A stretch of DNA of 38,171 nt, from positions 26,860,058 through 26,898,228 of the forward strand of contig NC_069002.1 in NCBI RefSeq assembly GCF_001194135.2, in the 5' to 3' direction. Origin of the DNA: Octopus bimaculoides (Eukaryota). The translations under genes and the position numbers were made by a program. Under the pieces are notes generated by a model, which saw nothing but the letters and a program-made list of their open reading frames with translations, was not told the origin of the DNA and did not search any database. Positions 1-38,171 of this stretch are shown here, piece after piece; position 1 is the stretch's first letter, and each line of letters starts with the position of its first letter.

Positions 1-278
1 GGTCTCTTTTTGCCGAACTGCTAAGTTACGGGGATGTAAACACACTAGCATCGGTTGTCAAGCGATGGTGGGGGGACAAACACAAACACACATGCATATA
101 TATATATATATATATGACAGGCTTCTTTCAGTTTCCGTCTACCAAATCCACTCACAAGGCATTGGTCGGCCCAAGGCTATAGTAGAAGACACTTGCCCAA
201 GGTGCCATGCAGTGGGACTGAACCCGGAACCATGTGGTTGGTAAGCAAGCTACTTACCACACAGCCACTCCTGTGCCT
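1..278 (-). mobile_element. tRNA-derived SINE family A, cut by the window start
   Basis: Minus-strand head AGGCACAGGAGTGGCTGTGTGG (box A) and GGTTCAGTCCC (box B), CTTGGGCAAGTG core, internal (TA)n/(TG)n. Confidence 0.85.
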
Positions 279-339
279 GTAAATAACATTTTCATTATTC
301 TCAATTTTAAAATGTATTTTGAATAACAATGACAAGTGA

Positions 340-2778: not shown

Positions 2779-2868
2779 GTGGAAATTGCTCGTTGGGTTT
2801 CATCTAAGCACAACATGGGCATGGCATTTATTCGCCAGATGTGGTTAGATATTAAAAAATGTGGACTC
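2779..2868 (+). CDS. MGAT2: MGAT2 (alpha-1,6-mannosyl-glycoprotein 2-beta-N-acetylglucosaminyltransferase) internal coding exon, 90 nt, phase 0-0
   Basis: Acceptor ttttgtttttctctcAG|, donor |GTaagt. Translates VEIARWVSSKHNMGMAFIRQMWLDIKKCGL, matching the W.S..HNMG.A motif of MGAT2. Joins the next exon in frame. Confidence 0.93.
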
Positions 2869-3025
2869 GTAAGTAAACACAATCAATTGATTTATTGTTT
2901 TATCAAGAAATTTGTTGTTCAATACCGAATCCAAAAGACTGGTAATTTAAAAAAATTTTTTTTTTTTTAAAAACAAACAAATTGGTCACCAAGTATGAAA
3001 TATTTGTGTTGATCAGATGTGAATA

Positions 3026-3254
3026 CTGGCAGCCAGCAAGGTGGTGGATGGGCAGAAACGCTGGAGCACCAGACAAATTACCTCCTGCTCCTTGTTACGG
3101 ATCTCTCTGTTCTGAGTTCAAATTCTGTGAAAGTCAACTTTGTCTTTCCCCCTTTGGGGGTTTGATAAGACAACATCCCAGTCAAGTACTGAATTGATTT
3201 AATTAATTAACACACTCCTGCTAAAATCAAGAGCCTTGTGCCTAAATTAGAAAC

Positions 3255-3316
<62 letters not shown>

Positions 3317-4166
3317 NNNNNNNNNNNNNNNNNNNNNNNNNNNNNNNNNNNNNNNNNNNNNNNNNNNNNNNNNNNNNNNNNNNNNNNNNNNNNNNNNNNN
3401 NNNNNNNNNNNNNNNNNNNNNNNNNNNNNNNNNNNNNNNNNNNNNNNNNNNNNNNNNNNNNNNNNNNNNNNNNNNNNNNNNNNNNNNNNNNNNNNNNNNN
3501 NNNNNNNNNNNNNNNNNNNNNNNNNNNNNNNNNNNNNNNNNNNNNNNNNNNNNNNNNNNNNNNNNNNNNNNNNNNNNNNNNNNNNNNNNNNNNNNNNNNN
3601 NNNNNNNNNNNNNNNNNNNNNNNNNNNNNNNNNNNNNNNNNNNNNNNNNNNNNNNNNNNNNNNNNNNNNNNNNNNNNNNNNNNNNNNNNNNNNNNNNNNN
3701 NNNNNNNNTAAATATTAAGGCAGCAAGCTGGCAGAATTGTTAGCATGCCAGGCGAAATGCTTTGTGGTATTTTGTCTGTCTTCACATTCTGGGTTCAAAT
3801 TCCACTGAGGCTGACTTTGCCTTTCATCTTTCAGGGGTCAATAAAATAACTGTTGAACACTGGGGTCGATATAATTGACTTAGCCCATACCTCAAAATTG
3901 CTGGCCTTGTGCCAAAATTTGAAACCATTTTTATTATTACTCTTACTAAGTGAGGCAGTGAGCTGGCAGAGTCGTTAGCACGCTGGATGAAATGCTTAAC
4001 AGTATTTCGCCAATCGCTACTTTCTGAGTTCAATTTCCACCGAGGTCAATTTTTGCCTTTCATCCTTTTGGGTTCAATAGATTAAGTACCAGTCAAATAT
4101 TGGGATCATTGTGATCGACTGTCTTCCTCTCCACAAAATCCAGGCCTTGTACCTATAGTAGAAAGG

Positions 4167-4213
<47 letters not shown>

Positions 4214-5000
4214 GGCNNNNNNNNNNGGCAGAATCATTAGCATGCCGTGCAAAATGCTTAGCAGTATTTCGTCTGCCACTATGTTCTGAGTTCAAATTCT
4301 GCCGAGGTCGACTTTCGGGGTCGATCCAGTAAGTACCAGTTACGTTCTGGGGACGATGTAACCAACTTAAACCCCTCCCCCAAGCTGCCCTTGTGGCAAA
4401 AATTTGAAGTCATTATTATAATTATTATTATTTTCAAGGCAGTGAGCTGGCAGAACCTTTAGCATGCCAGACAAAATGCTTAACAGCACTTCATCCATCT
4501 TTACATTCTGAGTTCAAAATGCCGTCAAGGTTGACTTTGCCTTTCATCCTTTTGGGGTCGATAAAATAAGTACCAGTTGAACACTGGGTGTTGGGGGGTC
4601 GATGTATTCGACTCATCTCCAAGCTGCCCTTATGGCAAAATTTTAACCCATTATTGCTATTAAGGCAATTAGCAAAGAAACTCATTAGCATACTGGACAA
4701 AATTCTTTGCAGTATTTCTTCTGACCCTTTACATTCTGAGTTCAAATTCTGCTGAGGTCGACTTTGCCTTTCATCCTTTCGGGATCGATAAATTAAGTAC
4801 CAGTTGCATACTGGGGTGGATCTAATCGACTGATCCCTCCCCGACAATTTCAGGTTTTATGCCTATAGTAGAAAGGATTATTATTATTAAGGCAGCATCG
4901 TTAGCACCCAGACAAAATGCTTAGCAACGTTCCTTCTGGCTTGATCAATTGAGTTGAAGTTCCTGTAAGGTCATCTTTGCCCTTCATGCTTTGAGTTGAT
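3026..5000 (+). mobile_element. Head-to-tail array of ~7 tRNA-derived SINE family B copies with (ATT)n tails (interrupted by gaps)
   Basis: Repeated aaggcag.gagctggcagaa..ttagca (box A), gagttcaaattcc (box B), gactttgcctttcatcc, aagtaccag, ggccttgt.cc, (att)n. Heads near 3026, 3716, 3952, 4228, 4436, 4660 and 4889. Confidence 0.85.
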
Positions 5001-5454
5001 AAAATAAATCACCAATTCATTGTGCTTATCAAGGAAACGTTATCACATCTAAACCTCCACCCCCCACCCCGCCACCATCCCAAACATGGAAAGCAACCAA
5101 CTGGTTGCCATTGATCATCTCATATATTTGACCTCACTGTCAAAGACGATATCTCTTTCCTCAAACGTTCACCCTTCAACGTAACAAACAAAAGACTCCT
5201 TATTTTTATTTTTCTTCTTTCTTCAGATACAGAAAACACTTTAGTACCCTCTCCCCCACATGCACACACAATAACTATTAAGCCTCTAGAATGCCTGGGT
5301 GAGGCCCACAATAGGGTACTACTCCCACCACTAGAATGCTGTTGCTGCTACTTACCCCAACGCACCCACACACATCTTAAAACAAATCCTCAAATAAGGC
5401 CACTCAACCTAAAATCATTTACAAACACTACAAAAACTTGAACCAGCTGATGTA

Positions 5455-5830
5455 GGCTTGGCTATGCCGTAAAGATGTTTGCTTCCCAACCACATGGTTC
5501 CAGGTTCAGTCCCACAGCATGTCACCTTGGGCAAGTGTCTTCTACTATAGCTCAGTACTGTGCCAACCAAAACCTTGTGAATGGATTTGGTCAATGTAAA
5601 CTGAAAGACGCTCATTGTGTGTGTGTGTGTGTGTCTTTGTTTGCCCTCCACCACCGCTTGCCAACCAGTGTTGATAGTTTTACATCCCTGTAACTTAGCA
5701 GCTTAGCAAAGAAGACTGATAGAGTAAGTACCAAAACAAAAACAAAAAAATAAGTGCTGGGGTTGATTCTTCAAGGTGTTGCCCCAGCATTGCCACAGTT
5801 TAATGACTGAAACAGGTAAAAGGTAAGAGA
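5455..5830 (+). mobile_element. SINE family A, diverged near-full copy
   Basis: ccaaccacatggttccaggttcagtccc..cttgggcaagtgtc..gtaacttagc..ccccagcattgccacag..tgactgaaac. Confidence 0.8.
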
Positions 5831-6595
5831 GCAGACATACTGTGTCCTCTCTCTGCTTTTAGTAGCACTACTACAATGGCCTCTGCTCATCAGAGGTGAC
5901 AGGTCTTGTGCCATCTTCACTCAAACCCTTCTGAATCATTCCTCTTCCTCTCATCATCCACATTGTACTCTCCACTCCGACTACAATATCCAATCCCCCA
6001 CCCCCAGAACATGGGCCTTCTTCAATTCCCTCTCAGCACATATTTTTCCTGTGATTCAAAGGGCCAGCCTTGTCCCAATTGGGTGTCATGCTGAATCTCC
6101 CCGAGAACTATGTTAAGGGTACACGTGTGTGTAGAATTCTATTGCAGTGTAATGTTATCAGTAGATCCTTAACAACAGCAATATCACCCATTATGAAGGG
6201 TCTAGAAAAGGGTTTATTCAGGCCTGTTTTCCTGCTGGGCACCTTGGAGGAGGAGGAGGAGGAGGAGGCAGGGTGTCATTACTATCAATAACCAAGAAAA
6301 AAAAAAAGGTGAGTGAAGGCTCCAACTATGAAATACCTAACAGTGAAGCCACCTGGCAGTTCGTTGACTTGCTAGAAACAGCAGCCAAATCTTCCTTGTG
6401 TCCTGCATCTCTGTTTTAAAAAAAGAATCCATAGGACGGTGTGGTCCTTGATATGCACAACTTGATAAAAAAGAAAACTGGTCATGGATTGACTGTCTTT
6501 GATCTTAGGTTTTGTCAATCAGAGCTGATTTGGGGATCAACACCAACCAACAAAAGCTCTTTCTGGTTTTACTTACCTTTACAGTTTATTATTAG

Positions 6596-6830
6596 TTTAT
6601 ATATCAGGTGCAAATTGATTTGATAATCAGCTAGAGGAGGCATTCTCTTAGGGTCAAAATTAGTAGTAATGTCGGTTCACACGGAACAGCCATGTTGAAT
6701 TGGCAATAAGCATTATCTTTTAGTATAGTCACGACTTTACATCTCTTACAGAGAATATCTAACAAACTACTTTGCTTGTTACAAGATTGGTGACTAATTG
6801 TCACTTATCTATACTATAAATTGCAGTGTT
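6596..6830 (+). repeat. Third, 5'-truncated and more diverged copy of the retrozyme-like body (no HHR)
   Basis: Shares tatatcag..gataatcagctagagg..gaacagccatgttgaa..gtatagtca..agaga..tctaacaaactact..ttgtcacttat with the copies at 7540-8150. Confidence 0.75.
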
Positions 6831-7539
6831 CTTGATTGCTTGATTGATTGATTGATTGAGTGTCGGCAGATTCACTCAAGAACGGTGCAGTGGAATCGCG
6901 TGAAATTCAGCACAGAGCGGCAGCATGGTCCGCTCATGTTCAGGAGATTTTTATTGCCCTCCAACTCCCATGGTTACCGAGATAATCGATTATTACTTTT
7001 TAAGATAGGAATATCCCATTCAAAGTGGGGAGGGGCGATTTTGTTGCCTTTCCCATGCGCGAAATGTTACGAAAAACCAGTACAATATAGATTATTTTNN
7101 NNNNNNNNNNNNNNNNNNNNNNNNNNNNNNNNNNNNNNNNNNNNNNNNNNNNNNNNNNNNNNNNNNNNNNNNNNNNNNNNNNNNNNNNNNNNNNNNNNNN
7201 NNNNNNNNNNNNNNNNNNNNNNNNNNNNNNNNNNNNGGGCAAGCGAGTGTAACATCGAAATAACTTGAAAAGAATGCATGTGGGAATGCCGTTATAATGA
7301 ATGCTCATTTAAATGTATTTTGCATGTAGTTGGTGTACTTTTTAACAGGAGAGGAGTGCCTGCAGGCTGGTTCTTTCTCAAGTTTATGCATTTTCAGGTT
7401 CAATGTGTTTCAAATAAGTACTGACAATTGAAGGTGATTGCAAAGACAAAGAACTACCTGTTCTTTTTTTAACAATTTTAACAGTGAGAACATTGGACAA
7501 AATATGTTATTGACATTAATAGTTTGTACCTCAGCTAAT

Positions 7540-8150
7540 TACTGATGATGGGCAAAAATTGACTGAGGCCTTGTCAAGTTGCCAGAAGATGGTTAGAGTT
7601 CACTCACCTACTTGCAATATATCAGATGCAGGTTGCATCGATAACTAGCTAGAGGAGACGTCCTCTTGCGGTTAAAAAACAGTAACATTAGTTTGTATGG
7701 ACACAGCCATGTTGAAGTAGTGACAAACATTACTTCTCGGTATAGTCACCGCTTTCATCCCCTGTAGAGATTTTCTAACAAACTACTTTTATCATTGCAA
7801 GATCGATGACTGGTTGTCACTTATTTTTCTATATATTCCAAGCTGGAGCAAACTACTGCTCTCTCTAGCAGACAGGTGTCCACCACTGATGATGATCAAA
7901 AATTGACCGAAACCAGCCTGGTTTGGTCTGGTGGCCCTGTCAAGTTGCTACAAGATGGTTGGGGTACGCTCCCCTGCTTGCAATATATCAGATACACGTT
8001 ACATTGATAACCAGCTAGAGGCGGTGCCCTTTTGGGGGTAAAAAATAGCAATAATGTTGGTTTGTATGGAACAGCCATGTTGAAGTGGCGACAAACTTTA
8101 CTTCTTGGTATAGTCATTACTTTCATCTCTTATAGAGATTTTCTAATAAA
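7540..8150 (+). mobile_element. Tandem ~345-365 nt HHR-containing repeat (non-LTR retrozyme-like), ~1.7 units
   Basis: CTGATGAT-G..CAAAAATTGAC occurs at 7542 and 7886, each followed by the same body (tgtcaagttgc..aagatggtt..cttgcaatatatcagat..agctagagg..acagccatgttgaagt..gtatagtca..agagattttctaa). The first unit has lost ~20 nt covering stem III and the cleavage site. Confidence 0.7.
7871..7941 (+). ncRNA. Type I hammerhead ribozyme, apparently intact, predicted cleavage after GUC (7928|7929)
   Basis: Core CTGATGA 7886-7892; extra T 7893; stem II GATCAA/TTGACC (one A.C mismatch); GAAA 7909-7912; stem III ACCAG/TTGGT; GTC 7926-7928; stem I CCACCA/TGGTGG, internal loop, then GACAGG/CCTGTC. Confidence 0.85.
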
Positions 8151-9138
8151 TGTATTATTATTATTATTATTATACAAGTGGTTTCCTTTGTGAAATGCTC
8201 TGGGTCCAGTCTTCATATTGCGTAGATAGACAAGTCCCAGCTCACTGAAGGTTTGAAACCCTCACCCTGGCCTGTGAACATCGTTGTTCAGGGCATGACT
8301 GCTGTTGCATGCAGACAGCTTTGAGGAGCCACAGTTGAGAGAGCTGGATGTCAGGTGAGAACCAGGGTGGACGAATTACTCCAAAGGGCACCACATGTTC
8401 CCCCGTCAGAGTTACCATCCCACCAAGACAGTTTACTGCCGCTCTGGTCCTTGGGTGATTTTAGAGGGGTCAACTCTGTTAGCAAACATTCACTTGGACA
8501 AGGCTTTCCACCACCACCCAGTTTTGGAGGCCCTGGAAAGAGTCAAGGGTTTTGGACTGTGCAATAAATATATAAATAAAGACAGCCAGAGGTCTCTTCC
8601 ACACGTCACTGCCCTCAGCATCACTGTTGTCCCCACCATCACATAAGTACTGTTCAAGTTACTATCGACTAAATTGCCTTCCCTCGATATTCCCGGCCTT
8701 GTACCTAAATTAGAAACCATCATTATTGTTATTATAATTATTATTGATTTTGCTGACGAGAATCAAGTTATGATACATAGCAACGAAATTTGCGAAGACA
8801 AACGAATGACGAAAGTGAAAACACTCAAGACATCGATCTGCTAACTGTTATCGATAAACTATTGCATTGTCCACATTTGTCTATGTTTAAAAGAGTTATT
8901 TGGTTCGCCGTCACGCTTTCGATCGAAGTCTGTCTGTCTCCGCCATCGCCACTACTGTCATCAACATCATCATCGTCGTTGCCAACTTCTTTCCCGATGC
9001 ATTTGCAAATACAACAACAACAACAAAAAAATTAATTACGTTACCTTGAAACTTTGGAGTACTTACGTAAGTGTGTGTGTGTGTCCCCGCTGGCTTTATT
9101 TCCTTATAACTTTCAGAAAAATTAGTATTTTTTAATAA

Positions 9139-9375
9139 AACTTTCTACAAATACCTTTCAGGTGTTGAAGATTACGATTATATCGGAATTTAATATATAT
9201 TTTTTTAAAAAGAAAAGTAATCGGTGGCGCGCATATTTGCATACTAACACACGTCACAAAATGAAACTTGGAATTTTACGTTATTGCACACACCTACCAA
9301 TTTTTTTCTCAATTTTCCCCGCATTAATTCCGATATAATTATAATTTACACAATCTGAAAGATATTTGTAGATAA
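9139..9375. repeat. ~55-bp imperfect inverted repeat pair (decayed MITE core)
   Basis: tctacaaatacctttcagg..attatatcggaattt versus aattccgatataatt..ctgaaagatatttgtaga. Confidence 0.55.
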
Positions 9376-9699
9376 GGAAACAAAAGCTGGCGTGGTTGGG
9401 GCACGCTTGTATAGTTAGGCCGAGACAGCGTAGTAAAGGGAGGTAATTAGATGTTTGGGCTAAGGGGAATAACCCTAATCAGATTATCTCAAGAAATTAA
9501 TTACTTGACGAAACCCCGATCTGTATGTATGTTTGTCTTTCGTCTGATACTGGTTTAGGCCAGAGGCTGAGGCCATGCTGGAGCACTGCCTTTGAGTGTG
9601 TTTCGGTTTCTTCTCTGTACTGTTTCTGGAGAAGGAGCAAGTTGGACGGAGATGCTCTTCTTTGTGCCTCGTGTCACGACGTGTAATATTTCCTGGATT

Positions 9700-10140
9700 A
9701 TGGTTGCGAGCTGGCAGAATCGATAGCACACCGGGCGAAATCCTTAGCGGCATTTCGTTCTTCTTTACATCATGAGTTCAAATTCCGCTGAGGTCGACTT
9801 TGCCCTTCATCATCTCAGGGTCGATAAATGAAGTACCAATTGAGCACTGGGGTCGATGTAATCGACACATCCTCTCCCCCAAAATGTCTGCCCTTGTGGC
9901 AAAATTTTTAACCATTATAATTGTTATTATTAGTATTAAGGTGGTGAACTGGCAGAACCATTAGCACGCTAGGCAAAATGCTTAGCGGCATTTCGTCCGA
10001 CTTTACATTTCTGAGTTCGAATTCCAGTGTAGTCGACTTTACTTTTCATCCTTTCAGAGTCAATAAAATAAGTACCAGTTATGCACTGAGGTCGATGTAA
10101 TCGACTTACACTTCCCACCCACACACAGAGACACATAAAA
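9700..10140 (+). mobile_element. Two tandem SINE family B copies
   Basis: Heads at ~9705 and ~9938 with the same internal motifs. Confidence 0.85.
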
Positions 10141-10342
10141 CTGCCAGCCTGGGTACATGCATTGGATTTAGGGAGTACTTATTACTCTTTGATCACTTCA
10201 TATTGCACCGCTTGCTCTGTTGATTGGTTGGTAGATTGTGAATATTACTGGTATTCCTCATGAGTACCCTGTTAGCCAAATGTATGACATGGTGGAGTGC
10301 TTCCAAGTTAATTACCATGATCATTACAGTCCAAACTACTTT

Positions 10343-10495
10343 GGGACGTGTGGTAAGAAGCTTGCTTCCCAACCACATGGTTCCGGGTTCAGTCCCACTG
10401 CTTGGTATCTTGGGCAAGTGTGTTATACTGTAGCCTTGGGCCAACCATAGCCTTGTGATTGGCTTTGGTTGATGGAAACTGAAAGAAGCCTGTCG

Positions 10496-10530
<35 letters not shown>

Positions 10531-10533
10531 TTA
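10343..10533 (+). mobile_element. SINE family A, 5' half, ending at a (TA)n tract and gap
   Basis: gtgtggtaagaagcttgcttcccaaccacatggttccgggttcagtccc..ggaaactgaaagaagcc. Confidence 0.8.
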
Positions 10534-11298
10534 TNNNNNNNNNNNNNNNNNNNNNNNNNNNNNNNNNNNNNNNNNNNNNNNNNNNNNNNNNNNNNNNNNN
10601 NNNNNNNNNNNNNNNNNNNNNNNNNNNNNNNNNNNNNNNNNNNNNNNNNNNNNNNNNNNNNNNNNNNNNNNNNNNNNNNNNNNNNNNNNNNNNNNNNNNN
10701 NNNNNNNNNNNNNNNNNNNNNNNNNNNNNNNNNNNNNNNNNNNNNNNNNNNNNNNNNNNNNNNNNNNNNNNNNNNNNNNNNNNNNNNNNNNNNNNNNNNN
10801 NNNNNNNNNNNNNNNNNNNNNNNNNNNNNNNNNNNNNNNNNNNNNNNNNNNNNNNNNNNNNNNNNNNNNNNNNNNNNNNNNNNNNNNNNNNNNNNNNNNN
10901 NNNNNNNNNNNNNNNNNNNNNNNNNNNNNNNNNNNNNNNNNNNNNNNNNNNNNNNNNNNNNNNNNNNNNNNNNNNNNNNNNNNNNNNNNNNNNNNNNNNN
11001 NNNNNNNNNNNNNNNNNNNNNNNNNNNNNNNNNNNNNNNNNNNNNNNNNNNNNNNNNNNNNNNNNNNNNNNNNNNNNNNNNNNNNNNNNNNNNNNNNNNN
11101 NNNNNNNNNNNNNNNNNNNNNNNNNNNNNNNNNNNNNNNNNNNNNNNNNNNNNNNNNNNNNNNNNNNNNNNNNNNNNNNNNNNNNNNNNNNNNNNNNNNN
11201 NNNNNNNNNNNNNNNNNNNNNNNNNNNNNNNNNNNNNNNNNNNNNNNNNNNNNNNNNNNNNNNNNNNNNNNNNNNNNNNNNNNTATATATATATATAA

Positions 11299-11475
11299 TC
11301 ATCATCAACATTTAACGTCCATTTTCCATGCTAGTATGGGTTGGACAGCGTGACAGGAACTGGCAAGGCCACACCAAGTTCCACAGTCTTTTTTAGCTGG
11401 ATTGTTACAGCTGGATGTCCTTCCTAATGCCAACCACGTTACAGGATGTACTGGACGCTTTTAACGTGGCACCTT
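11299..11475 (-). mobile_element. RTE-type 3' tail fragment
   Basis: catcatc..ttttccatgctagtatgggttggacag..ggatgtccttcctaatgccaaccac, the reverse of the tail at 480-630. Confidence 0.7.
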
Positions 11476-11687
11476 AGTTTTAGGATCTTAATTCTGTTGT
11501 GGTGGGCAGGTTTTCTCGACTATTGCAATGTGCCACATATCTTGGCCTTCAGTACTTCATCCCATGTTTTCCTAGGTCTTCCTGTTCTACCACTTCCTTT
11601 ACTTGAAGTGATCAACCCTTCTTTATGCAGCTGTACTCTCTCTATATATAGATGTATGTATGCATGTCTATATCTCTCTCTCTTGAA

Positions 11688-11725
<38 letters not shown>

Positions 11726-12297
11726 ATATATATGTGTGTGTAGTTTTATTTATCTTTAGTGGAAAGATTTATCAAAGATTACAGCTGCAGTTTTGTTTAT
11801 TCACAAACATTAATTTGATCTTCAGTTTAGATTATACCCTTTGGTAACAGTGCAGCACATGGTTGAATCTTACTAATAGTCTAACAGCTATTCTGATGGG
11901 TCGTTAATACAATAGATAATGTAATTAACTTCAGGTGGTGGTGGTGGTGTTGATTTTAAATAGAACAGTGGTGATTAATCAATACTGTTCACCAATTAAA
12001 TAAATTCAGAAATTAAAATTAGACAACGTTAAAACGTTTTTTGGTGATGTCTGAAATGGAATTTCATTGTTGCAAAGAAGTATGCTGAGATCGAAGAGGA
12101 AATCTAATGCGTTGCCACTTAAACTTCCCAAACACTTTATGGTTTCAAAATAGGTTTTGAGAGTGCTGCTCCATATTGTTTTTTAAAAAATCATGGTTTA
12201 AATTTGTGTAAACATGTCTCAAGTTCTTACTCAAAGTCTCACATGATTTCTTAATGGTCATGGTTGTGTATACCCTAGTTTTGGGACTATGATGTTA

Positions 12298-12610
12298 TCT
12301 TTTACTTGTTTCAGTCATTAGATTGTGGCCATGCTGGGGCAGTACCTTTTCTATTTTTTAAGCCTGGTACTCATGCTATTAGTCTCTTTTGCTGAACTGC
12401 TAAGCTATGGGGATGTAAACACACCAACACTGGTTGTCAAGCAGTGGTGGACACACGACAGGCTTCTCTCAGTTTCCATCTGCCAAATCAACTCACAAAG
12501 TTTTGGTTGGCCTGAGGCTAAAGTAGATGTTTGTCCAAGTTACCATGCAGTGGGACTGAACTCAAAACCGTGCACTTCAGAAGCAAACTTCTTACCACAC
12601 AGCCATGCCA
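12298..12610 (-). mobile_element. SINE family A, diverged copy
   Basis: ttacttgtttcagtc..gccatgctgg..ctaagc..taaacacacc..gtgggactgaac..cttaccacacagcca. Confidence 0.8.
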
Positions 12611-12689
12611 ACACTAATTATGTGAATTTCTTTTCTCAAGATCTTCTATTGCAGTGCTTCACTAAGTATACAGTATCAAGCCCTAAGGG

Positions 12690-12870
12690 TAGATATTATG
12701 GAGGTGGCAACGACGAGGGTTCCAGTTAATCCAATCAACAGAACAGCCTGCTTGTGAAATTACCATGCAAGGGGCTGAGCATTCTACAGACATGTGTACC
12801 CTTAACATAGTTCTCAGGGAGATTCAGCGTGACACAGAGTGTGACAAGGCTGGCCCTTTGAATTACAAGC
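12690..12870 (+). repeat. Unclassified interspersed repeat, with an inverted partial copy at ~6060-6140
   Basis: gtgtacccttaacatagttctc.ggggagattcagc.tgacac..gacaaggctggccc occurs in both places in opposite orientation. Confidence 0.7.
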
Positions 12871-13069
12871 AAATAACTAATGTGAAGTGCTGATGCATCA
12901 GATATTCACTTCCAAGGGAGTGGTTTTGTGGCATGCCATCAGCTGTGTGTGTCATGTGGTCAGCCAGAACTAAATTACTCTGACCTGATGTTAATGTATA
13001 GGTACAGGAAAAATAGGGGGAGGAGGGAAACATCGAAAGGATGTCAGTGAAAGGAAAGGGGTGATATTA

Positions 13070-13717
13070 AGCCTTGCTGTGTGGTTAAGGAGCTTGCTTT
13101 GCAACCATATGGTCTCAGGTTCAGTCCCACAACAGAGCCCTCCTTGTCACGAACTCTCACCTGTTCCCAAGTAGGGTTGTATTTCCCCATGACCAGACAT
13201 GTTTTTATGAGAGATTGAAAAGGGAAGACACTGCTTGAATGATAGTGACATTCACAAGTACAATGCGATGTTAAACCAATGACATAGTAACAAACAGGCA
13301 CACAGATAAACACACACACACATATACATATATATTAGATATACACATTGAGCTTCTTTCAGTTTCCATCTACTAACGTCTTGGTCATCCCAAGTCCACT
13401 TGGCCATTGCATCATGGAATGGGGGCTGAAGCTGAAACCTTGCGGCTGGGAAGCAAACTTTTTACCACACAGCCACACCTCTGCATAAATATACACACAC
13501 ATGTGTGTGTATGTATACACATGCATATATATGTATGTGTGTGTCTATTTGCCCAAAACTTGACCACTGGTGTTGGTTTGTTTACACCCCCGTAACTTAA
13601 CAGTTCAGTAAAAGTGACCAATACAACAAGTACCAGGTTTAAGTAAGTCTTGGAGTTAAGTTCAACTGTACCATTGAAGGTATGGCCCCAGTCCAGTGAC
13701 TGAAACAAGTAGAAGAT
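13070..13717. mobile_element. Cluster of SINE family A fragments (head + at ~13075, 5' half - at ~13345-13490, 3' half + at ~13535-13717)
   Basis: Recognisable head, core and tail motifs; the last fragment ends ~95 nt before the exon acceptor at 13810. Confidence 0.65.
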
Positions 13718-13810
13718 AGTGTTTCACAAACTTTTCTTTTTAAGTATTGTACTGAGTGAAGATTTAAATAATTTTCAGGGATAATAATTGGAAGTATTTT
13801 CTCCTTACAG

Positions 13811-13935
13811 GAATTCTGCAACTTCGATGATTACAATTGGGATTGGACTTTGCAGCATTTAAGTATGAAGTGTATCCCAGGTACTGTGAAGGTAATGAAA
13901 ATGAAGGCCACTCGTGTATTTCATATGGGAACATG
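13811..13935 (+). CDS. MGAT2: MGAT2 internal coding exon, 125 nt, phase 0-2
   Basis: Acceptor ttttctccttacAG|, donor |GTgagt. Translates EFCNFDDYNWDWTLQHLSMKCIPGTVKVMKMKATRVFHMGT+TG, containing the MGAT2 signature FC..DDYNWDWTLQ and R.FH.G.C. Missed by the ORF track. Confidence 0.96.
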
Positions 13936-14092: not shown

Positions 14093-14663
14093 GTAATCCC
14101 TTACCATATCACAGTTCACCCGACGCGCACTCAGTACATCGTGGATTTTTCTGGTTGATATATGTAAATTTATATCACGGGTTTCTGCGCTCAGTAGGTA
14201 TTTATATTATTTTAGCTTTTAATTATTTCTGTGGGAGNNNNNNNNNNNNNNNNNNNNNNNNNNNNNNNNNNNNNNNNNNNNNNNNNNNNNNNNNNNNNNN
14301 NNNNNNNNNNNNNNNNNNNNNNNNNNNNNNNNNNNNNNNNNNNNNNNNNNNNNNNNNNNNNNNNNNNNNNNNNNNNNNNNNNNNNNNNNNNNNNNNNNNN
14401 NNNNNNNNNNNNNNNNNNNNNNNNNNNNNNNNNNNNNNNNNNNNATGCGTGTGTGCAACAAAACATGAAAAACTTGTCTTACCTTAGGAAGAACATACAC
14501 GCATTATACACGCATTTTTGCCAGTATATACGCAGTGAAGCTATACAATAGCGTCGTTTTTATATCGATTGCTATTCTCCAGCAAATATCGGTACCTTGT
14601 TGTACCATTCTTATGAATTTATATATATATATATATATATACTGACACACACACATACATATA

Positions 14664-15231
14664 TGAGGGTGAGTAAAAAAGCAATGACATTTTGTTTAGG
14701 ACAGGTATAATTACCAACACAGGAGCATGTATCATACATCAAAATGAAGCTGGTCCTCTGTGGATCACATCCCTACTTCTCCACATAGTCACCGTTTCTC
14801 TCAATAGCAATGTTCCATCTTCGAACGAGAGCATGTATCCCTGCCCCATAAAATTCTGCTGATTGTTCTTTGAACAACTTCTTCACTACAGTTTTCACTT
14901 CCTCGTCACTAGAATAATTTAGCGCCTTCAGACTATCATCTCTTCGGCCCCATGAAAGAGGGTTTGAGAGGCAAACATTATTCCAGTGACGAAGAAGTGA
15001 AAACTGTAGTGAAGAAGTGGCGTCAAGAACAGTCAACAGAATTTTACGTGGCAGGGATACATGCTTTTATTCGAAGGTGGAACATTGCTATTGAGAGAAA
15101 CGGTGACTATGTTGAGAAGTAGGGATGTGATCCACAGAGGACCAGCTTCATTTTGATGTATGATACATGTTCCTGTGTTGGTAATTATACCTGTCCTAAA
15201 CAAAATGGCATTACTTTTTGACTCACCCTCA
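14664..15231. mobile_element. Foldback mariner-derived element with two inverted ~255-bp copies of a mariner 3' end, TA-flanked
   Basis: Termini TA|TGAGGGTGAGTAAAAAAG and CTTTTTGACTCACCCTCA|TA; arms 14664-14918 and 14977-15231. Encodes a mariner C-terminal remnant DYHLFGPMKEGLRGKHYSSDEEVKTVVKKW..GIHA.IRRWNIAIERNGDYVEK*. Confidence 0.9.
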
Positions 15232-17598: not shown

Positions 17599-18058
17599 AT
17601 TTACATTATTTACATTTGACAGATATTTGTCCTCTTCTTGTTTGTTGTTAACACAATGTTTCGGCTGATATACCCTTCAGCCTTTGGTCAGTCAACCATT
17701 CATCCACTCTTAGGTGCCATCAGAAAAATATAGCTAGCTTTTGATGGAGTTTCTCTATATGTCTCCACTATGCCATATGCCCGGGCATATGGTGTAGTGG
17801 TTAAGAGTGCGGACTACTAACCCCAAGATTCTGAGTTCGATTCCAGGCAGTGACTTGAATAAATAATAATAATAACAACAACATCGAAAAATACTTTAGG
17901 AATGAGAATCCAGGTTCGAAATTTTCCCAAGACACCTGATGAGGGCTGGAGGGTGTATCAGCCGAAGCGTTGTGTTAACAACAAACAAGATGAGGACAAA
18001 TATCCTGTCAAATGTAAATAATGTACATAATTCCTCATCTCTTAAATATAGAACTGAG
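17599..18058 (+). mobile_element. Composite retroposon insertion: inverted tail copy, spacer, tRNA-derived head and minimal-HHR tail, flanked by 10-bp TSD TCATCACTTT
   Basis: TSD at 17589-17598 and 18059-18068. Box A TGGTGTAGTGG 17790-17800; box B GAGTTCGATTCC 17833-17844. HHR motif 17931-17976. Segment 17602-17684 is the reverse complement of ~17942-18025. Confidence 0.8.
17931..17976 (+). ncRNA. Minimal type I hammerhead motif, probably inactivated (GAAA to GAAG)
   Basis: Stem I GACAC/GTGTT; CTGATGA; extra G; stem II GGCTG/CAGCC; GAAG-C-GTT with remnant palindromic stem III. Confidence 0.7.
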
Positions 18059-18204: not shown

Positions 18205-18460
18205 TGGTGTCCATCACAAAGGAAAGGTTTGTAGCCCAGAAGCAAAAAAGAAAGCAGTTGAGAAACTTTTGCTTGATAATAAACAAAACTTCTTCCCAAA
18301 CGTTATCACAATGGCCGGCGTTTCCGGTTTACGTCTACGTGATCCGAAACCAAACGGAGGCTGGGGAGACTACAGGGACAGACAACTGTGTTACAGTTTC
18401 ATCCATAGAAACACTTCAGAATTGAGTTTTATTAAGAACCCTAATATCACAAGGTCTTAA
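18205..18460 (+). CDS. MGAT2: MGAT2 terminal coding exon (phase 2 start, ends at TAA)
   Basis: Acceptor tttttattttccAG|; TG+T completes the Cys. Translates CGVHHKGKVCSPEAKKKAVEKLLLDNKQNFFPNVITMAGVSGLRLRDPKPNGGWGDYRDRQLCYSFIHRNTSELSFIKNPNITRS*, with the conserved CG.HH and NGGWGD.RD..LC motifs. Confidence 0.96.
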
Positions 18461-19143: not shown

Positions 19144-19756
19144 TGGTGGTGGCGAACTGGCAGAATCGTTAGCACGCCAGGCAAAATGCTTAGCAGTATT
19201 TTGTCTGTTGCTTCGTTCTGAGTTCAAATTCCACCGAGATCAATAAATTAAGTACCAGTGAAACACTGGGGGGTCAATTTAATCAAGTAGTCCCCTCCTC
19301 CAAAATTTCAGGCCTTATGCCTATAGTAGAAAGGATTATTATTACTATTATTATTATTATTATTATTATTATTAAGGTGATGAGCTGGCAGAGCCATTAG
19401 CATGCCAGGTGAAATGCTTGGTGGTATTTCATCTGTCTCTACATTCTGGGTTCAGATTCTGCCATGGTCGACTTTGCCTTTCAGGGTCGATTAAATAAGT
19501 ATCAGTTATGCACTGCAGTCAATGTACCCCCTCCCCCATTATTAATTATTAAGATGGCAACCTGGCAGAATCGTTAACGTGCCGCGTAAAATGCTTAATG
19601 GTATTTCGTCCAGAGCTCAAATTCTGCCAAACTTGAGTTTGCCTTTCATCTCTTTCAGGGTCGGTAAAATAAGTATCAGTCAAGCCCTGGGGGTCAATGT
19701 AATTGACAAGCCCTCTCCCCTCAAAAACCTCAGGCCCTGTGCCTTCAGCAGAAATG

Positions 19757-19797
<41 letters not shown>

Positions 19798-23769: not shown

Positions 23770-24145
23770 TTTTGTTTCAGTCGTTTGACAGCGGCCATGC
23801 TGGAGCACTACCTTTAATCGATCAAATCAACCCCAGGACTTATTCTTTGTAAGCCTAGTACTTATTCTATCAGTCTCTTTTGCTGAACCGCTAAGTTACA
23901 GGGACGTAAACACACCAGCATCGGTTGTCAAGCGATGGTGGGGCAGATAAACACAGACACACAAACATACACACACACACACACATATACGATGGACTTC
24001 TTTCAGTTTCCGTCTACCAAATCTACTCACAAGGCTTTGGTCGACCCGAGGCTATAGTAGAAGACACTTGCCCAAGGTGCCACGCAGTGGGACTGAACTC
24101 AGAGCCATGTGGTTGGTAAGCAAGCTACTTACCACACAGCCACTT
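23770..24145 (-). mobile_element. SINE family A, near-full length
   Basis: High similarity to the copy at 2082-2490. Confidence 0.9.
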
Positions 24146-25000
24146 TCATTATTCATTAACATATGGAATTGGTTAAAAGTGGAATGAAAGACTTTCTTTT
24201 TCCTTTCCCCATTCCTTAAATGAAAAATATATTTCATTCAGGATCTTCCAAAACAAGAGTCTTTAAATAAATTAGCACAACATCGTCATGACAACAATTA
24301 TAATTAACAACAAAAAGGGTGGCGGGGAATGTTACTGGTGACAGAACAAGGTGATTGGAGGTGGGTATTAATAACCTATATTGAAATGAACTATTTAATC
24401 TGAGGTCATTTGACCTGGTTGATAATTTTTCTGATAGCAGAGTATTAGTCTGTTGCCATCGTTAAGCAATTCACCATTAGCTTATCTTTATACTAAAGCA
24501 GTCTGTCATTATCTTACCCTAACTTACCTTTATACAGATACAATCTACCTTGATTGTTAATGTTTTTTTTTTTTTTTATTTGCTACCATTATTATTGTTG
24601 TTGTGTATTTCTAATAAAAAATCCACTGATAAAGAAATAGAGCCGGTAGGAATTGTTCAGAGTAAACAAGTTGAACTGATGAGAGTAACCTTTACAATAA
24701 AGTCTATGAAATGTCATAACATTATAAGAGAGAGAGACTGTCCTGAACAACTACAGCGACCACCACCAATAACATTGCTACTACCACTACAACCATTGTC
24801 TCTACTATAGCTACTACTGTCCCACCTTGATACAAATTTTATTTCCTTCCTAATTCCTTGTTGCTTTGTCTTCAGAAATGTCCTGTAGGTTGTAATCCCA
24901 GAAACCATGTGCGATATCACAATTCTAGAATAAGGTTTAAAAAACTGAAGAAAAAATAAGAAACTAGGAATTCAATTTATCTGTTTATGGGTGATCTGTG

Positions 25001-26231: not shown

Positions 26232-26374
26232 AATAGGTTGGCAGACCTTTTGGAGCATTACTTTGTGGTATTTTCTCCAACTCTGTAAGTTCTGAGTTCA
26301 AATCCTGCCAAGAGCTGCGGTCTAAGGCTCTTAAAATTGTTGGCTTTGTGCCTAAATCAGAGACAATTATTATG

Positions 26375-26406
<32 letters not shown>

Positions 26407-26407
26407 G

Positions 26408-26491
<84 letters not shown>

Positions 26492-30290: not shown

Positions 30291-30965
30291 TACACAGGAG
30301 TGACTGAAATACTTTAAATATTACATAGATTTTTCCATAATATGTGTTCCCTAGTTAAAACCTAAGTCAAATACAATAATATAATTTTCTGAAACTATAT
30401 GATAATAATAAAACTCGATATCCATTTTAACTATATTTAATACGGGGGTGGGGGGCATAAATTAAAGGGAGACAACTAGAGTATATGTAATAGTTGAATA
30501 ACTTGAGTAATATTTATAACTTCTATATTTGCCCCAGGCATGACACATTACGTTACAATTTTACAAAGGACTTGTGACATCACTTGTGGCTCTTTCTGGA
30601 ACTGGGAAAATAAAGTTCCAGTCGAGAACTGGACTGAGCCTCCCTCATCCCCATCTCTTTTGAACTTACTGGCTTTGTGCCTTAATTAGATGCAATTAAT
30701 GCATTAACGAGTGGTATATCATCTGAAATAAACAATACACATTATATATATATATATATATATATATATNNNNNNNNNNNNNNNNNNNNNNNNNNNNNNN
30801 NNNNNNNNNNNNNNNNNNNNNNNNNNNNNNNNNNNNNNNNNNNNNNNNNNNNNNNNNNNNNNNNNNNNNNNNNNNNNNNNNNNNNNNNNNNNNNNNNNNN
30901 NNNNNNNNNNNNNNNNNNNNNNNNNNNNNNNNNNNNNNNNNNNNNNNNNNNNNNNNNNNNNNNNN

Positions 30966-31557: not shown

Positions 31558-31766
31558 TACTCTCTTTACTCTTTTACTTGTTTCAGTCATTTGACTGCGG
31601 CCATGCTGGAGCACCGCCTTTAGTCGAACAACTTGACCCCGGAACTTATTCTTTGTAAGCCTAGTACTTATTCTATTGGTCTCTTTTGCCGAACTGCTAA
31701 GTGACGGGGACATCAACACACCAGCATCAGTTGTCAAGCAATGCTAGGGGGGACAAACACACACAC

Positions 31767-31801
<35 letters not shown>

Positions 31802-31973
31802 CATATATACAACAGGCTTCTTTCAGTTTCCGTCTACCAAATCCACTCACAAGGCTTTGGTCGGCCCGAGGCTATAGTAGAAGACACTTGCCCAAGATGC
31901 CACGCAGTGGGACTGAACCCGGAACCATGTGGTTGGTAAGCAAGCTACTTACGACACAGCCACTCCTGCGCCT
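31558..31973 (-). mobile_element. SINE family A, full length and young-looking
   Basis: Complete head AGGCGCAGGAGTGGCTG through tail AAGTAAAAGAGTAAAGAGAGTA. Confidence 0.92.
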
Positions 31974-37830: not shown

Positions 37831-37951
37831 TTCTTAAATTTCATGGTGTGTCTGAAGTAAATACGGTATTGGAGAGCAGAAGGAAATATGCTATGGAGAG
37901 CAAGATGTTTAATTTAGAAACAACTGAATGGGTTATGGTGAGCAGATTTAT

Positions 37952-38171
37952 GATATTTAATTATCTAATTAATAATATTATCCAATTAATGATATTTAAT
38001 TATCTAATTAATAATATTATCCAATTAATGATATTTAATTATCTAATTAATGATATTATCCAATTAATGATATTTGATTATCTAATTAATAATATTATCC
38101 AATTAATGATATTTAATTATCTAATTAATGATATTATCCAATTAATGATATTTGATTATCTAATTAATAAT
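37952..38171. repeat. 39-bp AT-rich minisatellite, at least 5.6 units, running off the window
   Basis: Unit gatatttaattatctaattaat(a/g)atattatccaattaat starts at 37952, 37991, 38030, 38069, 38108 and 38147. Confidence 0.95.

What the first reader, a model, noticed from the sequence alone, without database searches (positions are those of the whole stretch)
7871..7941. Apparently intact self-cleaving type I hammerhead ribozyme on the sense strand of an MGAT2 intron
Seen in sequence: all invariant core bases are present (C3-U4-G5-A6-U7-G8-A9; G12-A13-A14; A15.1-U16.1; C17 in a GUC triplet). All three helices fold: stem I is 6 bp, an internal loop (UGU/C), then 6 bp, with possible further pairing TAGCA 7866-70/TGCTA 7946-50; stem II has 5 of 6 bp and an AAA loop; stem III has 5 bp. 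Established: an extra nucleotide between A9 and G10.1 is tolerated in natural hammerheads (e.g. chrysanthemum chlorotic mottle viroid), a stem I bulge contacting loop II accelerates type I HHRs, and conserved intronic HHRs exist in amniote genes. Inference: the MGAT2 pre-mRNA could be cut at 7928|7929, which could affect splicing or output of an essential N-glycan branching enzyme.
Basis: partly seen in the sequence, partly recalled or inferred. Interest (0 to 1): 0.9.

Follow-up and report, generated by a model that had tools for sequence, protein, structure and literature searches.

The report
Retroelement-borne hammerhead ribozyme in MGAT2 intron
The hammerhead ribozyme motif is real and its catalytic core is intact, but it is the processing ribozyme of an old, decayed tandem-repeat retroelement (a "retrozyme"-type element) that landed in an intron of a mollusc MGAT2 gene, which is a common kind of sequence in invertebrate genomes and not a sign of gene regulation.

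Summary
Window 7871-7941 (+) holds a type I hammerhead with every invariant core base, three helices and a GUC cleavage triplet. A structural descriptor finds it once in the window and never in 300 dinucleotide shuffles. It lies in the sense strand of a 10.9-kb MGAT2 intron.

The element ends in a (TAT)n run. The upstream unit carries a dead hammerhead. Unit size, 40-41% GC, a strongly self-paired monomer and the lack of coding capacity match metazoan non-LTR retrozymes. The unpaired U after A9, the G10.1-C11.1 pair and the 6-bp helix II match Penelope-like-element hammerheads.

Two distant relatives have a much shorter orthologous intron with no copy. Rfam scores it at only 21 bits (HH9; gathering score 52). 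Helix II has an A.C mismatch, and a competing hairpin is about 10 kcal/mol more stable than the active fold.

Most likely this is a retroelement relic that may still cut weakly. A host role is unsupported. It is a new member of a known kind, of low interest.

The parts
7871..7941 (+). Type I hammerhead ribozyme motif: helix I 7871-7885 / 7929-7941, core CUGAUGA 7886-7892, unpaired U 7893, helix II 7894-7908, GAAA 7909-7912, helix III 7912-7927. The predicted cleavage is after C7928.
   Evidence: Read directly. Pair list checked. Descriptor gives 1 hit against 0 in 300 shuffles. Rfam HH9 aligns over the full model at 21 bits.
7866..7950 (+). Hammerhead with the extra closing pairs of helix I (UAGCA 7866-70 / UGCUA 7946-50).
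   Evidence: The MFE fold keeps the whole of helix I. z-score is -4.87 against shuffles.
7905..7928 (+). Competing hairpin: GACC / GGUC plus AAACCA / UGGUUU. It sequesters A13, A14, A15.1 and C17. The stretch 7919-7933 reads as three tandem UGGUN pentamers.
   Evidence: MFE structure. Active fold is -23.7 to -25.1 against MFE -35.0 kcal/mol. The pentamers are read directly.
7885..8150 (+). Repeat unit C (3'-most and incomplete). It starts inside the hammerhead at A-CUGAUGA and ends at ...TTTTCTAATAAA.
   Evidence: BLAST of the element on the window gives 81-82% identity to unit B, E about 1e-56. Families D1, D5, D9, D10. Alignment A2.
7541..7884 (+). Repeat unit B. Its own hammerhead (7541-7575) is dead: the 5' strand of helix I is missing, and 22 nt are deleted (A13/A14, helix III, the cleavage site and part of helix I).
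   Evidence: Alignment A2, columns 26-100. Family D10.
6599..6835 (+). Partial repeat unit A (73-76% identical). It is separated from unit B by about 700 bp of unrelated sequence that includes an assembly gap (7099-7236). It is probably the same array, interrupted.
   Evidence: The intervening sequence is not repeated elsewhere in the window.
8151..8174 (+). (TAT/ATT)n run directly after the last unit. It is either a retroposon-type 3' tail or a microsatellite target site.
   Evidence: Read directly. A SINE-like repeat pair in the same window ends in ATT-rich runs. The only candidate target-site duplication is low-complexity TTATTATTA.
2779..2868 (+). MGAT2 exon upstream of the host intron (AG acceptor at 2777-78, GTAAGT donor at 2869-74).
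   Evidence: Pfam PF05060 positions 213-243. Splice sites read.
13811..13935 (+). MGAT2 exon downstream of the host intron (encodes ...EFCNFDDYNWDWTLQ...FHMGT).
   Evidence: Pfam PF05060, E 3.7e-16. Splice sites read. The frame joins exon 18205-18460 to read ...FHMGTCGVHHKG.

Best explanation
The hammerhead is the self-processing ribozyme of a non-autonomous retroelement of the metazoan 'non-LTR retrozyme' kind, with a Penelope-like-element (PLE) type ribozyme. An array of about 2.3-2.7 units of a ~366-nt sequence was inserted long ago, in sense orientation, into an MGAT2 intron of a mollusc. In the life cycle described for such elements, a multimeric transcript is cut by the hammerhead in each unit. 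The unit-length RNA, with 5'-OH and 2',3'-cyclic phosphate ends, is circularised by the host tRNA ligase RtcB. The circle is then reverse-transcribed for more than one unit length and inserted as a tandem array. That life cycle is established for relatives and is not shown here. At this locus the array is decaying. Units differ by 14-27%, the upstream hammerhead is destroyed, and the array seems to be interrupted. The locus can therefore no longer release a unit-length RNA. The surviving hammerhead keeps a complete core, so it may still cut the MGAT2 pre-mRNA intron at 7928|7929. Any cutting is probably slow, because of the A.C mismatch in helix II and the strong competing hairpin. Since the cut would lie 5.9 kb upstream of the next exon in an intron, splicing is expected to tolerate it. 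No host function is needed to explain the motif's presence. Shown here: the motif, the repeat architecture, the gene context, and the absence from two distant orthologous introns. Inferred: the mode of mobilisation, the age, the weak activity and the neutrality.
For: (1) Tandem architecture. Units B and C are 81-82% identical with a 366-368 nt period, and a third partial unit is 73-76% identical. (2) A hammerhead remnant sits at the equivalent place in the upstream unit: ACUGAUGAUGGGCAAAAAUUGACUGA at 7541-7566 is 88% identical to 7885-7910. (3) The published retrozyme properties are met. These are type I hammerheads in 150-450 bp tandem repeats, GC below 45-50%, no LTR/PBS/PPT, and 170-400 nt highly self-paired circular RNAs; the mussel monomer is 353 nt (PMC7229834). 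Here the unit is 366-368 nt and GC is 40-41%. The reconstructed circular monomer folds to -105.7 kcal/mol, z = -3.46, with 0 of 200 shuffles as stable. No ORF of the unit has a homologue. [quoted passage not shown] The window has U7893, G7894-C7908, a 6-position helix II and ACCAGCCUGGU. (5) The module CUGAUGA-U-GGUCAAAAAUUGACC-GAAAC recurs 27/28 identical in minimal hammerheads on four unrelated metagenome contigs, where helix I covaries (GGAC/GUCC, CUCC/GGAG, CCUC/GAGG). (6) A 2026 preprint derives animal retrozymes from PLE terminal repeats and finds about 43% of Xenopus copies in introns. (7) Hammerheads are already counted in a cephalopod genome: 235 Hammerhead_1 loci in the giant squid (PMC6962438). 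(8) The orthologous intron of two relatives is 2.6-4.3 kb and has no unit and no hammerhead.
Against: No other genomic copies of the 366-nt unit could be retrieved, so the family's existence outside this locus, its consensus and any covariation in this ribozyme are untested. Only about 2.3-2.7 units are present, and only one carries a complete hammerhead. No convincing target-site duplication was found. No PLE reverse transcriptase or GIY-YIG ORF was seen in the window. A Pfam scan of most + strand ORFs of 45 aa or more gave only MGAT2, and just five selected ORFs (four on the minus strand, one on the plus strand) were scanned separately. Helix I (6+6+5 bp) and helix III (5 bp) are much longer than in PLE minimal hammerheads. 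The ATT-rich end fits LINE-type tailing as well as PLE microsatellite targeting, so the mobilising enzyme is open. The two relatives compared are distant (exon nucleotide identity 75-81%, introns unalignable), so the element's absence there does not exclude conservation among close relatives.
Confidence: 0.78

Rival explanations
1. Exapted host regulator. The hammerhead has been domesticated, like the amniote intronic HH9/HH10 hammerheads or the CPEB3 intronic ribozyme. Co-transcriptional cleavage of the intron at 7928|7929 would compete with splicing and set MGAT2 output.
For: The motif is in sense orientation in an intron and has a complete core. Its helix I architecture (6 bp, internal loop, outer stem) aligns over the full length of the Rfam HH9 model. 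The cleavage site is 5.9 kb from the next exon, comparable to the 9.9 kb of the CPEB3 ribozyme, whose inhibition raises CPEB3 protein (PMC10919898). The core survived while the neighbouring unit's hammerhead was destroyed.
Against: It is embedded in a decaying repeat whose units differ by about 19% from each other. It is absent from the orthologous intron in two relatives. At about 10% divergence per unit, survival of roughly 15 core bases by chance is not rare (about 0.2; my estimate). Helix II carries a mismatch and the active fold is strongly disfavoured. Introns cut by a slow hammerhead are still spliced (PMC2995048). About 43% of retrozyme copies lie in introns in Xenopus, so the location is unremarkable.
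Confidence: 0.05
2. Dead relic. The sequence descends from a hammerhead but no longer cleaves at all, because it folds into the GACC.AAACCA/UGGUUUGGUC hairpin and has a weakened helix II.
For: MFE is -35.0 against -23.7 to -25.1 kcal/mol for the active fold. The core-unpaired ensemble fraction is about 3e-7 in the nearest-neighbour model. There is an A.C mismatch at 10.2-11.2, where the metagenome relatives have G-C. PLE-type hammerheads show low self-cleavage in vitro (PMC4209133). The Rfam score is less than half the gathering score.
Against: Energy models ignore the tertiary core, and the proven HH9 consensus also shows a 5.5 kcal/mol gap. All invariant bases, the G10.1-C11.1 pair, a 5-bp helix III and a 12-17 bp helix I are present. 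An extra base after A9 is a natural feature.
Confidence: 0.15
3. Chance resemblance. This would be a fortuitous hammerhead-like string with no ribozyme ancestry.
For: Rfam E-value is 0.82 over the whole window and there is no gathering-score hit.
Against: The descriptor finds 0 hits in 300 shuffled windows. A second, degenerate copy lies one repeat period upstream. The CUGAUGA-helix II-GAAAC module is 27/28 identical to covarying minimal hammerheads elsewhere.
Confidence: 0.02

Closest known systems
Metazoan non-LTR retrozymes (Cervera & de la Pena 2020, PMC7229834). They include the newt satellite-2, Schistosoma Sm-alpha and mussel (353-nt) hammerhead repeats.
   Same: Both have a type I hammerhead once per unit of a head-to-tail repeat. 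Unit length of 366 nt falls in the 150-450 nt range, GC is about 40%, there is no coding capacity, and the monomer is strongly self-paired. Both occur in molluscs.
   Different: Only about 2.3-2.7 decayed units are present, with a single complete ribozyme. Family copy number, expression and circular RNA are unknown. The ribozyme has the PLE-type unpaired base and a 6-bp helix II instead of the canonical 4-bp helix II, and loop 1/loop 2 contacts are not recognisable.
Minimal hammerheads of Penelope-like elements (Cervera & de la Pena 2014, PMC4209133).
   Same: Both have an unpaired nucleotide between A9 and G10.1, a G10.1-C11.1 pair and a 6-bp helix II. The helix II/loop 2 sequence is 27/28 identical to minimal hammerheads found here on metagenome contigs. 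Helix III is near-palindromic.
   Different: PLE hammerheads have a 4-5 bp helix I and a 1-2 bp helix III and act as dimers. This one has a 6+6(+5) bp helix I and a 5-bp helix III, and should fold as a monomer. No PLE ORF or pseudo-LTR arrangement is seen around it.
Amniote intronic hammerheads HH9/HH10 (Rfam RF02275/RF02277; de la Pena & Garcia-Robles 2010, cited).
   Same: Both are type I hammerheads in the sense strand of an intron. Helix I is 6 bp, followed by an internal loop and an outer stem, and loop 2 is A-rich. HH9 is the best Rfam match.
   Different: HH9 is single-copy and ultraconserved across amniotes. This motif scores 21 bits against a gathering score of 52, lies in a repeat, and is absent from the orthologous intron of the two relatives available.
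CPEB3 intronic HDV-like ribozyme (PMC10919898).
   Same: It is a self-cleaving ribozyme in an intron several kb upstream of the next exon, and it is a precedent for cleavage competing with splicing.
   Different: It belongs to a different ribozyme class, is conserved in mammals, and has a measured effect on the host mRNA. None of this is shown here.

Membership tests
Hammerhead ribozyme (catalytic motif) | Invariant core C3 U4 G5 A6 N7 G8 A9, G12 A13 A14, A15.1-U16.1, H17 | tested here: met
   CUGAUGA 7886-92, GAA 7909-11, A7912-U7927, C7928
Hammerhead ribozyme (catalytic motif) | Three helices around the core, with a G10.1-C11.1 pair | tested here: met
   Helix I 6+6+5 bp, helix II 5 of 6 bp including G7894-C7908, helix III 5 bp. 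0 of 300 shuffles match the descriptor.
Hammerhead ribozyme (catalytic motif) | Mg2+-dependent self-cleavage after position 17 | not testable with these tools
   Needs in vitro transcription. Energy models put the active fold about 10 kcal/mol above the MFE, against 5.5 for the HH9 consensus.
Rfam Hammerhead_HH9 (RF02275) | Covariance-model score at or above the gathering score (52 bits) | tested here: not met
   21 bits. No Rfam family reaches its gathering score.
Rfam Hammerhead_HH9 (RF02275) | Conserved at the orthologous intronic site across species | tested here: not met
   No unit and no hammerhead in L001 or L002, which carry the orthologous MGAT2 exons. Both relatives are distant, so the test is weak.
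Metazoan non-LTR retrozyme | Type I hammerhead inside head-to-tail repeats of 150-450 bp, one per unit | tested here: met
   366-368 nt period. Units B and C are adjacent and unit A is nearby. A hammerhead or its remnant sits at each B/C-type junction. Only one ribozyme is complete.
Metazoan non-LTR retrozyme | Low GC (<45-50%), no LTR/PBS/PPT, non-coding | tested here: met
   GC is 0.40 for the element and 0.41 for the monomer. The unit's ORFs have no homologues. Primer-binding-site and polypurine-tract motifs were not searched for. No long terminal repeats appear among the direct repeats.
Metazoan non-LTR retrozyme | Highly self-paired unit-length RNA | tested here: met
   Circular fold of the 368-nt monomer is -105.7 kcal/mol, z -3.46, 0 of 200 shuffles.
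Metazoan non-LTR retrozyme | Multi-copy family dispersed in the genome; expressed as linear and circular RNA | not testable with these tools
Protein-space look-ups of unit ORFs found nothing.
Metazoan non-LTR retrozyme | Target-site duplication flanking the array | tested here: inconclusive
   Only TTATTATTA, which is part of ATT microsatellite on both sides.
PLE minimal hammerhead | Nucleotide between 9 and 10.1; G10.1-C11.1; helix II of 6-8 bp | tested here: met
   U7893, G7894-C7908, helix II of 6 positions with one mismatch. Criteria are from PMC4209133.
PLE minimal hammerhead | Short helix I (4-5 bp) and minimal or absent helix III (dimeric action) | tested here: not met
   Helix I is 6+6+5 bp and helix III is 5 bp with a 6-nt loop.
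PLE minimal hammerhead | Located in pseudo-LTRs flanking an RT/GIY-YIG ORF | tested here: not met
   No such ORF next to the element. A Pfam scan of most + strand ORFs of 45 aa or more gave only MGAT2. Five selected ORFs, four on the minus strand and one on the plus strand, gave nothing. The minus strand was not scanned exhaustively.

The most novel reading that the evidence does not exclude
A retroelement-derived, monomer-competent hammerhead has been retained in the sense strand of an MGAT2 intron in a molluscan lineage. It would act as a kinetic brake on the pre-mRNA of an essential N-glycan branching enzyme, making it an invertebrate counterpart of the amniote HH9 or CPEB3 intronic ribozymes.
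Probability: 0.05. Interest if true: 0.6.

Novelty: new member of a known kind. Interest (0 to 1): 0.2.

Why it matters
As it stands this is an annotation point. A hammerhead in a gene's intron need not mean regulation, because in invertebrates thousands of such motifs ride on retrozyme and Penelope-like retroelements. Two modest points of interest remain. First, this unit combines a PLE-type ribozyme module (unpaired base after A9, long helix II) with the tandem ~366-nt organisation and stable helix III of retrozymes. That fits the recent proposal that animal retrozymes derive from PLE terminal repeats, and would extend it to a mollusc. Second, the 28-nt core-helix II module is nearly identical (27/28) to minimal hammerheads on unrelated metagenome contigs, which points to deep conservation or horizontal spread of these elements. 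If the ribozyme still cuts, the locus would be a natural test of how an essential gene tolerates an intronic self-cleaving RNA.

Tried and rejected
(1) Rfam at gathering score over the whole window gave no hit. The sub-threshold HH9 match alone is not significant window-wide (E 0.82). The other sub-threshold hits are microsatellite-driven miRNA noise.

(2) I tried to retrieve further copies of the repeat through its spurious ORFs. Exact look-up of five ORFs found none in the collection. A profile search with an alignment of the three units' minus-strand translations gave 127 candidates, none scoring.

(3) A viral-contig scan with the ribozyme module found nothing.

(4) The orthologous-intron test reached only two distant relatives whose introns do not align. 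It shows absence there but cannot speak for close relatives.

(5) The target-site duplication search found only low-complexity ATT repeats.

(6) The ~700 bp between units A and B is not repeated in the window or in L001/L002, so its nature as an insertion is inferred only.

(7) Deleting one of the three UGGUN pentamers in silico, to test a slippage origin for the competing hairpin, was uninformative.

(8) A Pfam scan of transposon-looking ORFs (mariner-like, non-LTR RT-like) gave no family. A 14-bit, E 0.048 match to an unrelated bacterial protein family is far below its cut-off, so I treated it as noise and did not follow it.

(9) ARAGORN found no tRNA-like heads in the window.

(10) No paper in the library links retrozymes to cephalopods beyond a hammerhead count in the giant squid. 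The supplements held no cephalopod sequences.

Full report
THE OBSERVATION. Window 7871-7941 (+) reads GACAGG-UGU-CCACCA-CUGAUGA-U-GAUCAA-AAA-UUGACC-GAA-ACCAG-CCUGGU-UUGGU-C|UGGUGG-C-CCUGUC. Inner helix I (7880-85/7929-34) has 6 bp and outer helix I (7871-76/7936-41) has 6 bp. The UAGCA/UGCUA extension (7866-70/7946-50) adds 5 bp. Helix II has 5 of 6 pairs, including G10.1-C11.1 (G7894-C7908), with an A7895.C7907 mismatch. Helix III has 5 bp, one of them G.U. All invariant core bases are present, and C17 is base 7928 in a GUC triplet.

A descriptor of my own finds exactly this site on the two strands of the window. It requires CUGAUGA, 0-1 extra base, a G-C-closed helix II of at least 4 bp, GAAA, a helix III of at least 3 bp, UH, and a helix I of at least 5 bp. 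It finds nothing in 300 dinucleotide-preserving shuffles. The bare string CTGATGA-N(6-30)-CGAAAC is expected 0.04 times per window.

Rfam is much less decisive. No family reaches its gathering score. The best match is Hammerhead_HH9, aligned over the whole model but scoring only 21 bits against a gathering score of 52. Its E-value is 0.013 in a 601-nt search and 0.82 over the whole window.

GENE CONTEXT. A Pfam scan of + strand ORF pieces gives three hits to MGAT2 (PF05060) in colinear order, at profile positions 213-243, 245-323 and 287-349. Reading the DNA gives exons with canonical splice sites at 2779-2868, 13811-13935 and 18205-18460. The frame joins across the last junction to read ...FHMGTCGVHHKG.... 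The hammerhead is thus in the sense strand of the 10.9-kb intron 2869-13810. It lies 5.06 kb from the donor site and 5.88 kb from the acceptor site. The best named relatives of the exon peptides are gastropod and bivalve MGAT2-like proteins at 58-61% identity. The organism is a mollusc. I could not verify 'octopod'.

The motif is part of a direct tandem repeat with a period of 366-368 nt. Unit B runs from 7541 to 7884 and unit C from 7885 to 8150, and they are 81-82% identical (E about 1e-56). A third partial unit, A (6599-6835), is 73-76% identical to both.

Unit B begins inside a hammerhead, at A-CUGAUGA-U-GGGCAA-AAA-UUGACU-GA (7541-7566, 88% identical to 7885-7910). This copy lacks the 5' strand of helix I. 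It also has a 22-nt deletion that removes A13, A14, helix III, the cleavage site and part of helix I (alignment A2). The array therefore once carried a hammerhead per unit, and only the B/C junction copy is still complete.

Unit C stops at ...TTTTCTAATAAA (8150) and is followed by a (TAT)n run (8151-8174). The SINE-like repeat pair at 9697-10170 in the same window ends in ATT-rich runs. Unit A is separated from unit B by about 700 bp of unrelated sequence that contains an assembly gap (7099-7236). If that stretch is a later insertion, A, B and C are one array of about 2.3-2.7 units. Sequence just upstream of A contains TTATTATTA, and the same string occurs in the 3' run. This is too low-complexity to count as a target-site duplication.

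COMPARISON WITH KNOWN ELEMENTS. Cervera and de la Pena (2020, PMC7229834) showed that most type I hammerheads of animal genomes lie in short tandem repeats. The monomers are 150-450 bp, GC is below 45-50%, and there are no LTR, PBS or PPT motifs. These repeats are transcribed, self-cleaved and circularised by RtcB into 170-400 nt, highly self-paired circular RNAs, the 'non-LTR retrozymes'. A mussel has about 5000 copies, and one of its monomers is 353 nt.

The element here fits on each point I could test. The unit is 366-368 nt and GC is 0.40-0.41, against 0.37 for the window. No ORF of the unit has a homologue. A circular monomer reconstructed from cleavage site to cleavage site (7929-8150 + 7783-7928) folds to -105.7 kcal/mol, z = -3.46, with none of 200 shuffles as stable.

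The ribozyme itself carries the marks of Penelope-like-element (PLE) hammerheads listed by the same authors (2014, PMC4209133). [quoted passage not shown] Here ACCAGCCUGGU matches its own reverse complement at 10 of 11 positions.

A metagenome scan with CTGATGATGNNCAAAAATTGACNGA returned four contigs, L003-L006. In these, CUGAUGA-U-GGUCAAAAAUUGACC-GAAAC (27/28 identical to the window) sits in textbook minimal hammerheads: GGAC...GAA-ACAUGU-A|GUCC. Helix I covaries between copies (CUCC/GGAG, CCUC/GAGG, UCCUC/GAGGA), and helix II differs in two further copies on L005. This also suggests that the A at 7895 is a mutation of an originally paired G.

[quoted passage not shown] It also reports that about 43% of copies lie in introns in Xenopus. 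Rfam-based annotation has already counted 235 Hammerhead_1 loci in a cephalopod, the giant squid (PMC6962438). The window's motif differs from PLE minimal hammerheads in having a long helix I and a stable 5-bp helix III, so it should fold as a monomer. No PLE ORF is nearby.

IS IT STILL ACTIVE? This cannot be settled in silico. In its favour are a complete core, the G10.1-C11.1 pair, a stable helix III and a very stable helix I. Against it are the A.C mismatch at 10.2-11.2 and a competing hairpin at 7905-7928. That hairpin pairs GACC/GGUC and AAACCA/UGGUUU, with a GCC loop and G7909 bulged, and it buries A13, A14, A15.1 and C17.

The MFE structure (-35.0 kcal/mol, z -4.87) keeps helix I but adopts this hairpin. 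The hammerhead fold evaluates to -23.7 kcal/mol, and the best fold with an unpaired core to -25.1 kcal/mol. As a yardstick, the Rfam HH9 consensus, which represents a proven ribozyme, also has its active fold 5.5 kcal/mol above the MFE. A gap is therefore normal, but the gap here is about twice as large.

The stretch 7919-7933 reads UGGUU-UGGUC-UGGUG. A slippage duplication may have created the competitor, but an in-silico deletion was uninformative. PLE-type hammerheads cleave poorly in vitro. My estimate is roughly even odds of detectable cleavage in vitro, and that cleavage would be slow.

HOST ROLE? I found the orthologous MGAT2 exons on two ENA contigs, L001 and L002. Exon nucleotide identity is only 75-81% and the introns do not align. 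The orthologous intron is 2.6 kb in L002 and about 4.3 kb in L001. Neither 20-kb locus contains the repeat unit or any hammerhead. This argues against deep conservation but says nothing about close relatives.

The 19% divergence between units B and C, the destroyed neighbouring ribozyme and the probable later insertion all indicate neutral decay. At about 10% change per unit, survival of about 15 core bases by luck has a probability near 0.2, which is my estimate. Experiments cited in PMC2995048 showed that an intron cut by a hammerhead is spliced normally, and that only a fast ribozyme aborts splicing. The CPEB3 ribozyme (PMC10919898) shows that a host effect is possible in principle. With one live ribozyme the locus cannot release a unit-length RNA, so the element is also dead as a retrozyme source.

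VERDICT. The motif is real and correctly described. It is the ribozyme of a decayed retrozyme/PLE-type tandem retroelement that sits by accident in an MGAT2 intron. It is a new member of a known kind. The regulatory reading remains a low-probability possibility (about 5%). Settling it needs the source genome, close relatives and a cleavage assay.

Noticed in passing
window 17931-17976 (+): A second hammerhead-like motif of the PLE 'minimal' type: GACAC-CUGAUGA-G-GGCUGG[8-nt loop]UCAGCC-GAA-GCGU-U|GUGUU. Helix I is 5 bp, there is an unpaired base after A9, helix II is 6 bp, and helix III is reduced to GCGU. Position 15.1 is G instead of the invariant A, so it is probably inactive. It lies 229 nt upstream of the acceptor of the last MGAT2 exon, in the sense strand. 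The relaxed descriptor gives 0.02 hits per shuffled window, and 0 of 300 at this helix length. There is no Rfam match.
   Followed up: partly
L003-L006 (JGI metagenome contigs Ga0099364_10183978, Ga0209755_10386855, JGI24700J35501_10647854, JGI24702J35022_10130452): Minimal hammerheads with the same CUGAUGA-U-GGUCAAAAAUUGACC-GAAAC module as the window (27/28 identical), a covarying helix I and the palindromic helix III ACAUGU. L003 carries two copies in inverted orientation that form a long hairpin, which attracts spurious miRNA-family matches. L005 has two further variants with different helices I and II. The host organism of these contigs is unknown to me. It is unexplained why a 28-nt module is shared with a mollusc.
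   Followed up: partly
window 9697-10170 (+), also 8680-8743: Two adjacent copies (about 80% identical, 238-nt period) of a SINE-like repeat ending in ATT-rich runs. Similar ATT/TAT microsatellites are scattered through the window (3258-3316, 4167-4212, 19335-19374, 19757-19797, 26366-26491). ARAGORN finds no tRNA-like head.
   Followed up: no
window ~14640-15040, both strands: Two ORF fragments in opposite orientation end in ...SDEEVKTVVKK..EFY.AGIHA..RRWNIAIERNGDYVEK. From memory this resembles the C-terminus of mariner-family transposases. Pfam gave no hit.
   Followed up: partly
window 35237-35630 (-): ORF fragments (…FCYLGDPVSSRGGCTESVAARIRIAWAKFRELLPLL…GRLYDTC…, …MLHGSETWAM…) that from memory resemble the C-terminal part of non-LTR (LINE) reverse transcriptases. 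Pfam gave no significant hit.
   Followed up: partly
window 3317-3708, 7099-7236, 10535-11283, 14238-14444, 30770-30965, 36516-37416 and others: There are ten runs of N (2756 bases in all), so this is a gapped draft assembly. The gap at 7099-7236 lies between repeat units A and B and could hide further units.
   Followed up: no
window 37946-38171 (+): A 39-bp AT-rich minisatellite, 5.8 copies at 95% identity, that runs off the end of the window.
   Followed up: no
window 1-280, 2120-2540, 5415-5700, 10240-10450, 12320-12730, 23790-24240, 31700-32100: A dispersed repeat family, present on both strands, whose translations recur (…RHLPKVPRSGTEPGTMWLVSKLLTTQP…). It is often next to (TA)n/(CA)n-like runs and is probably another SINE/MITE-like element. 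It was seen only in ORF listings.
   Followed up: no
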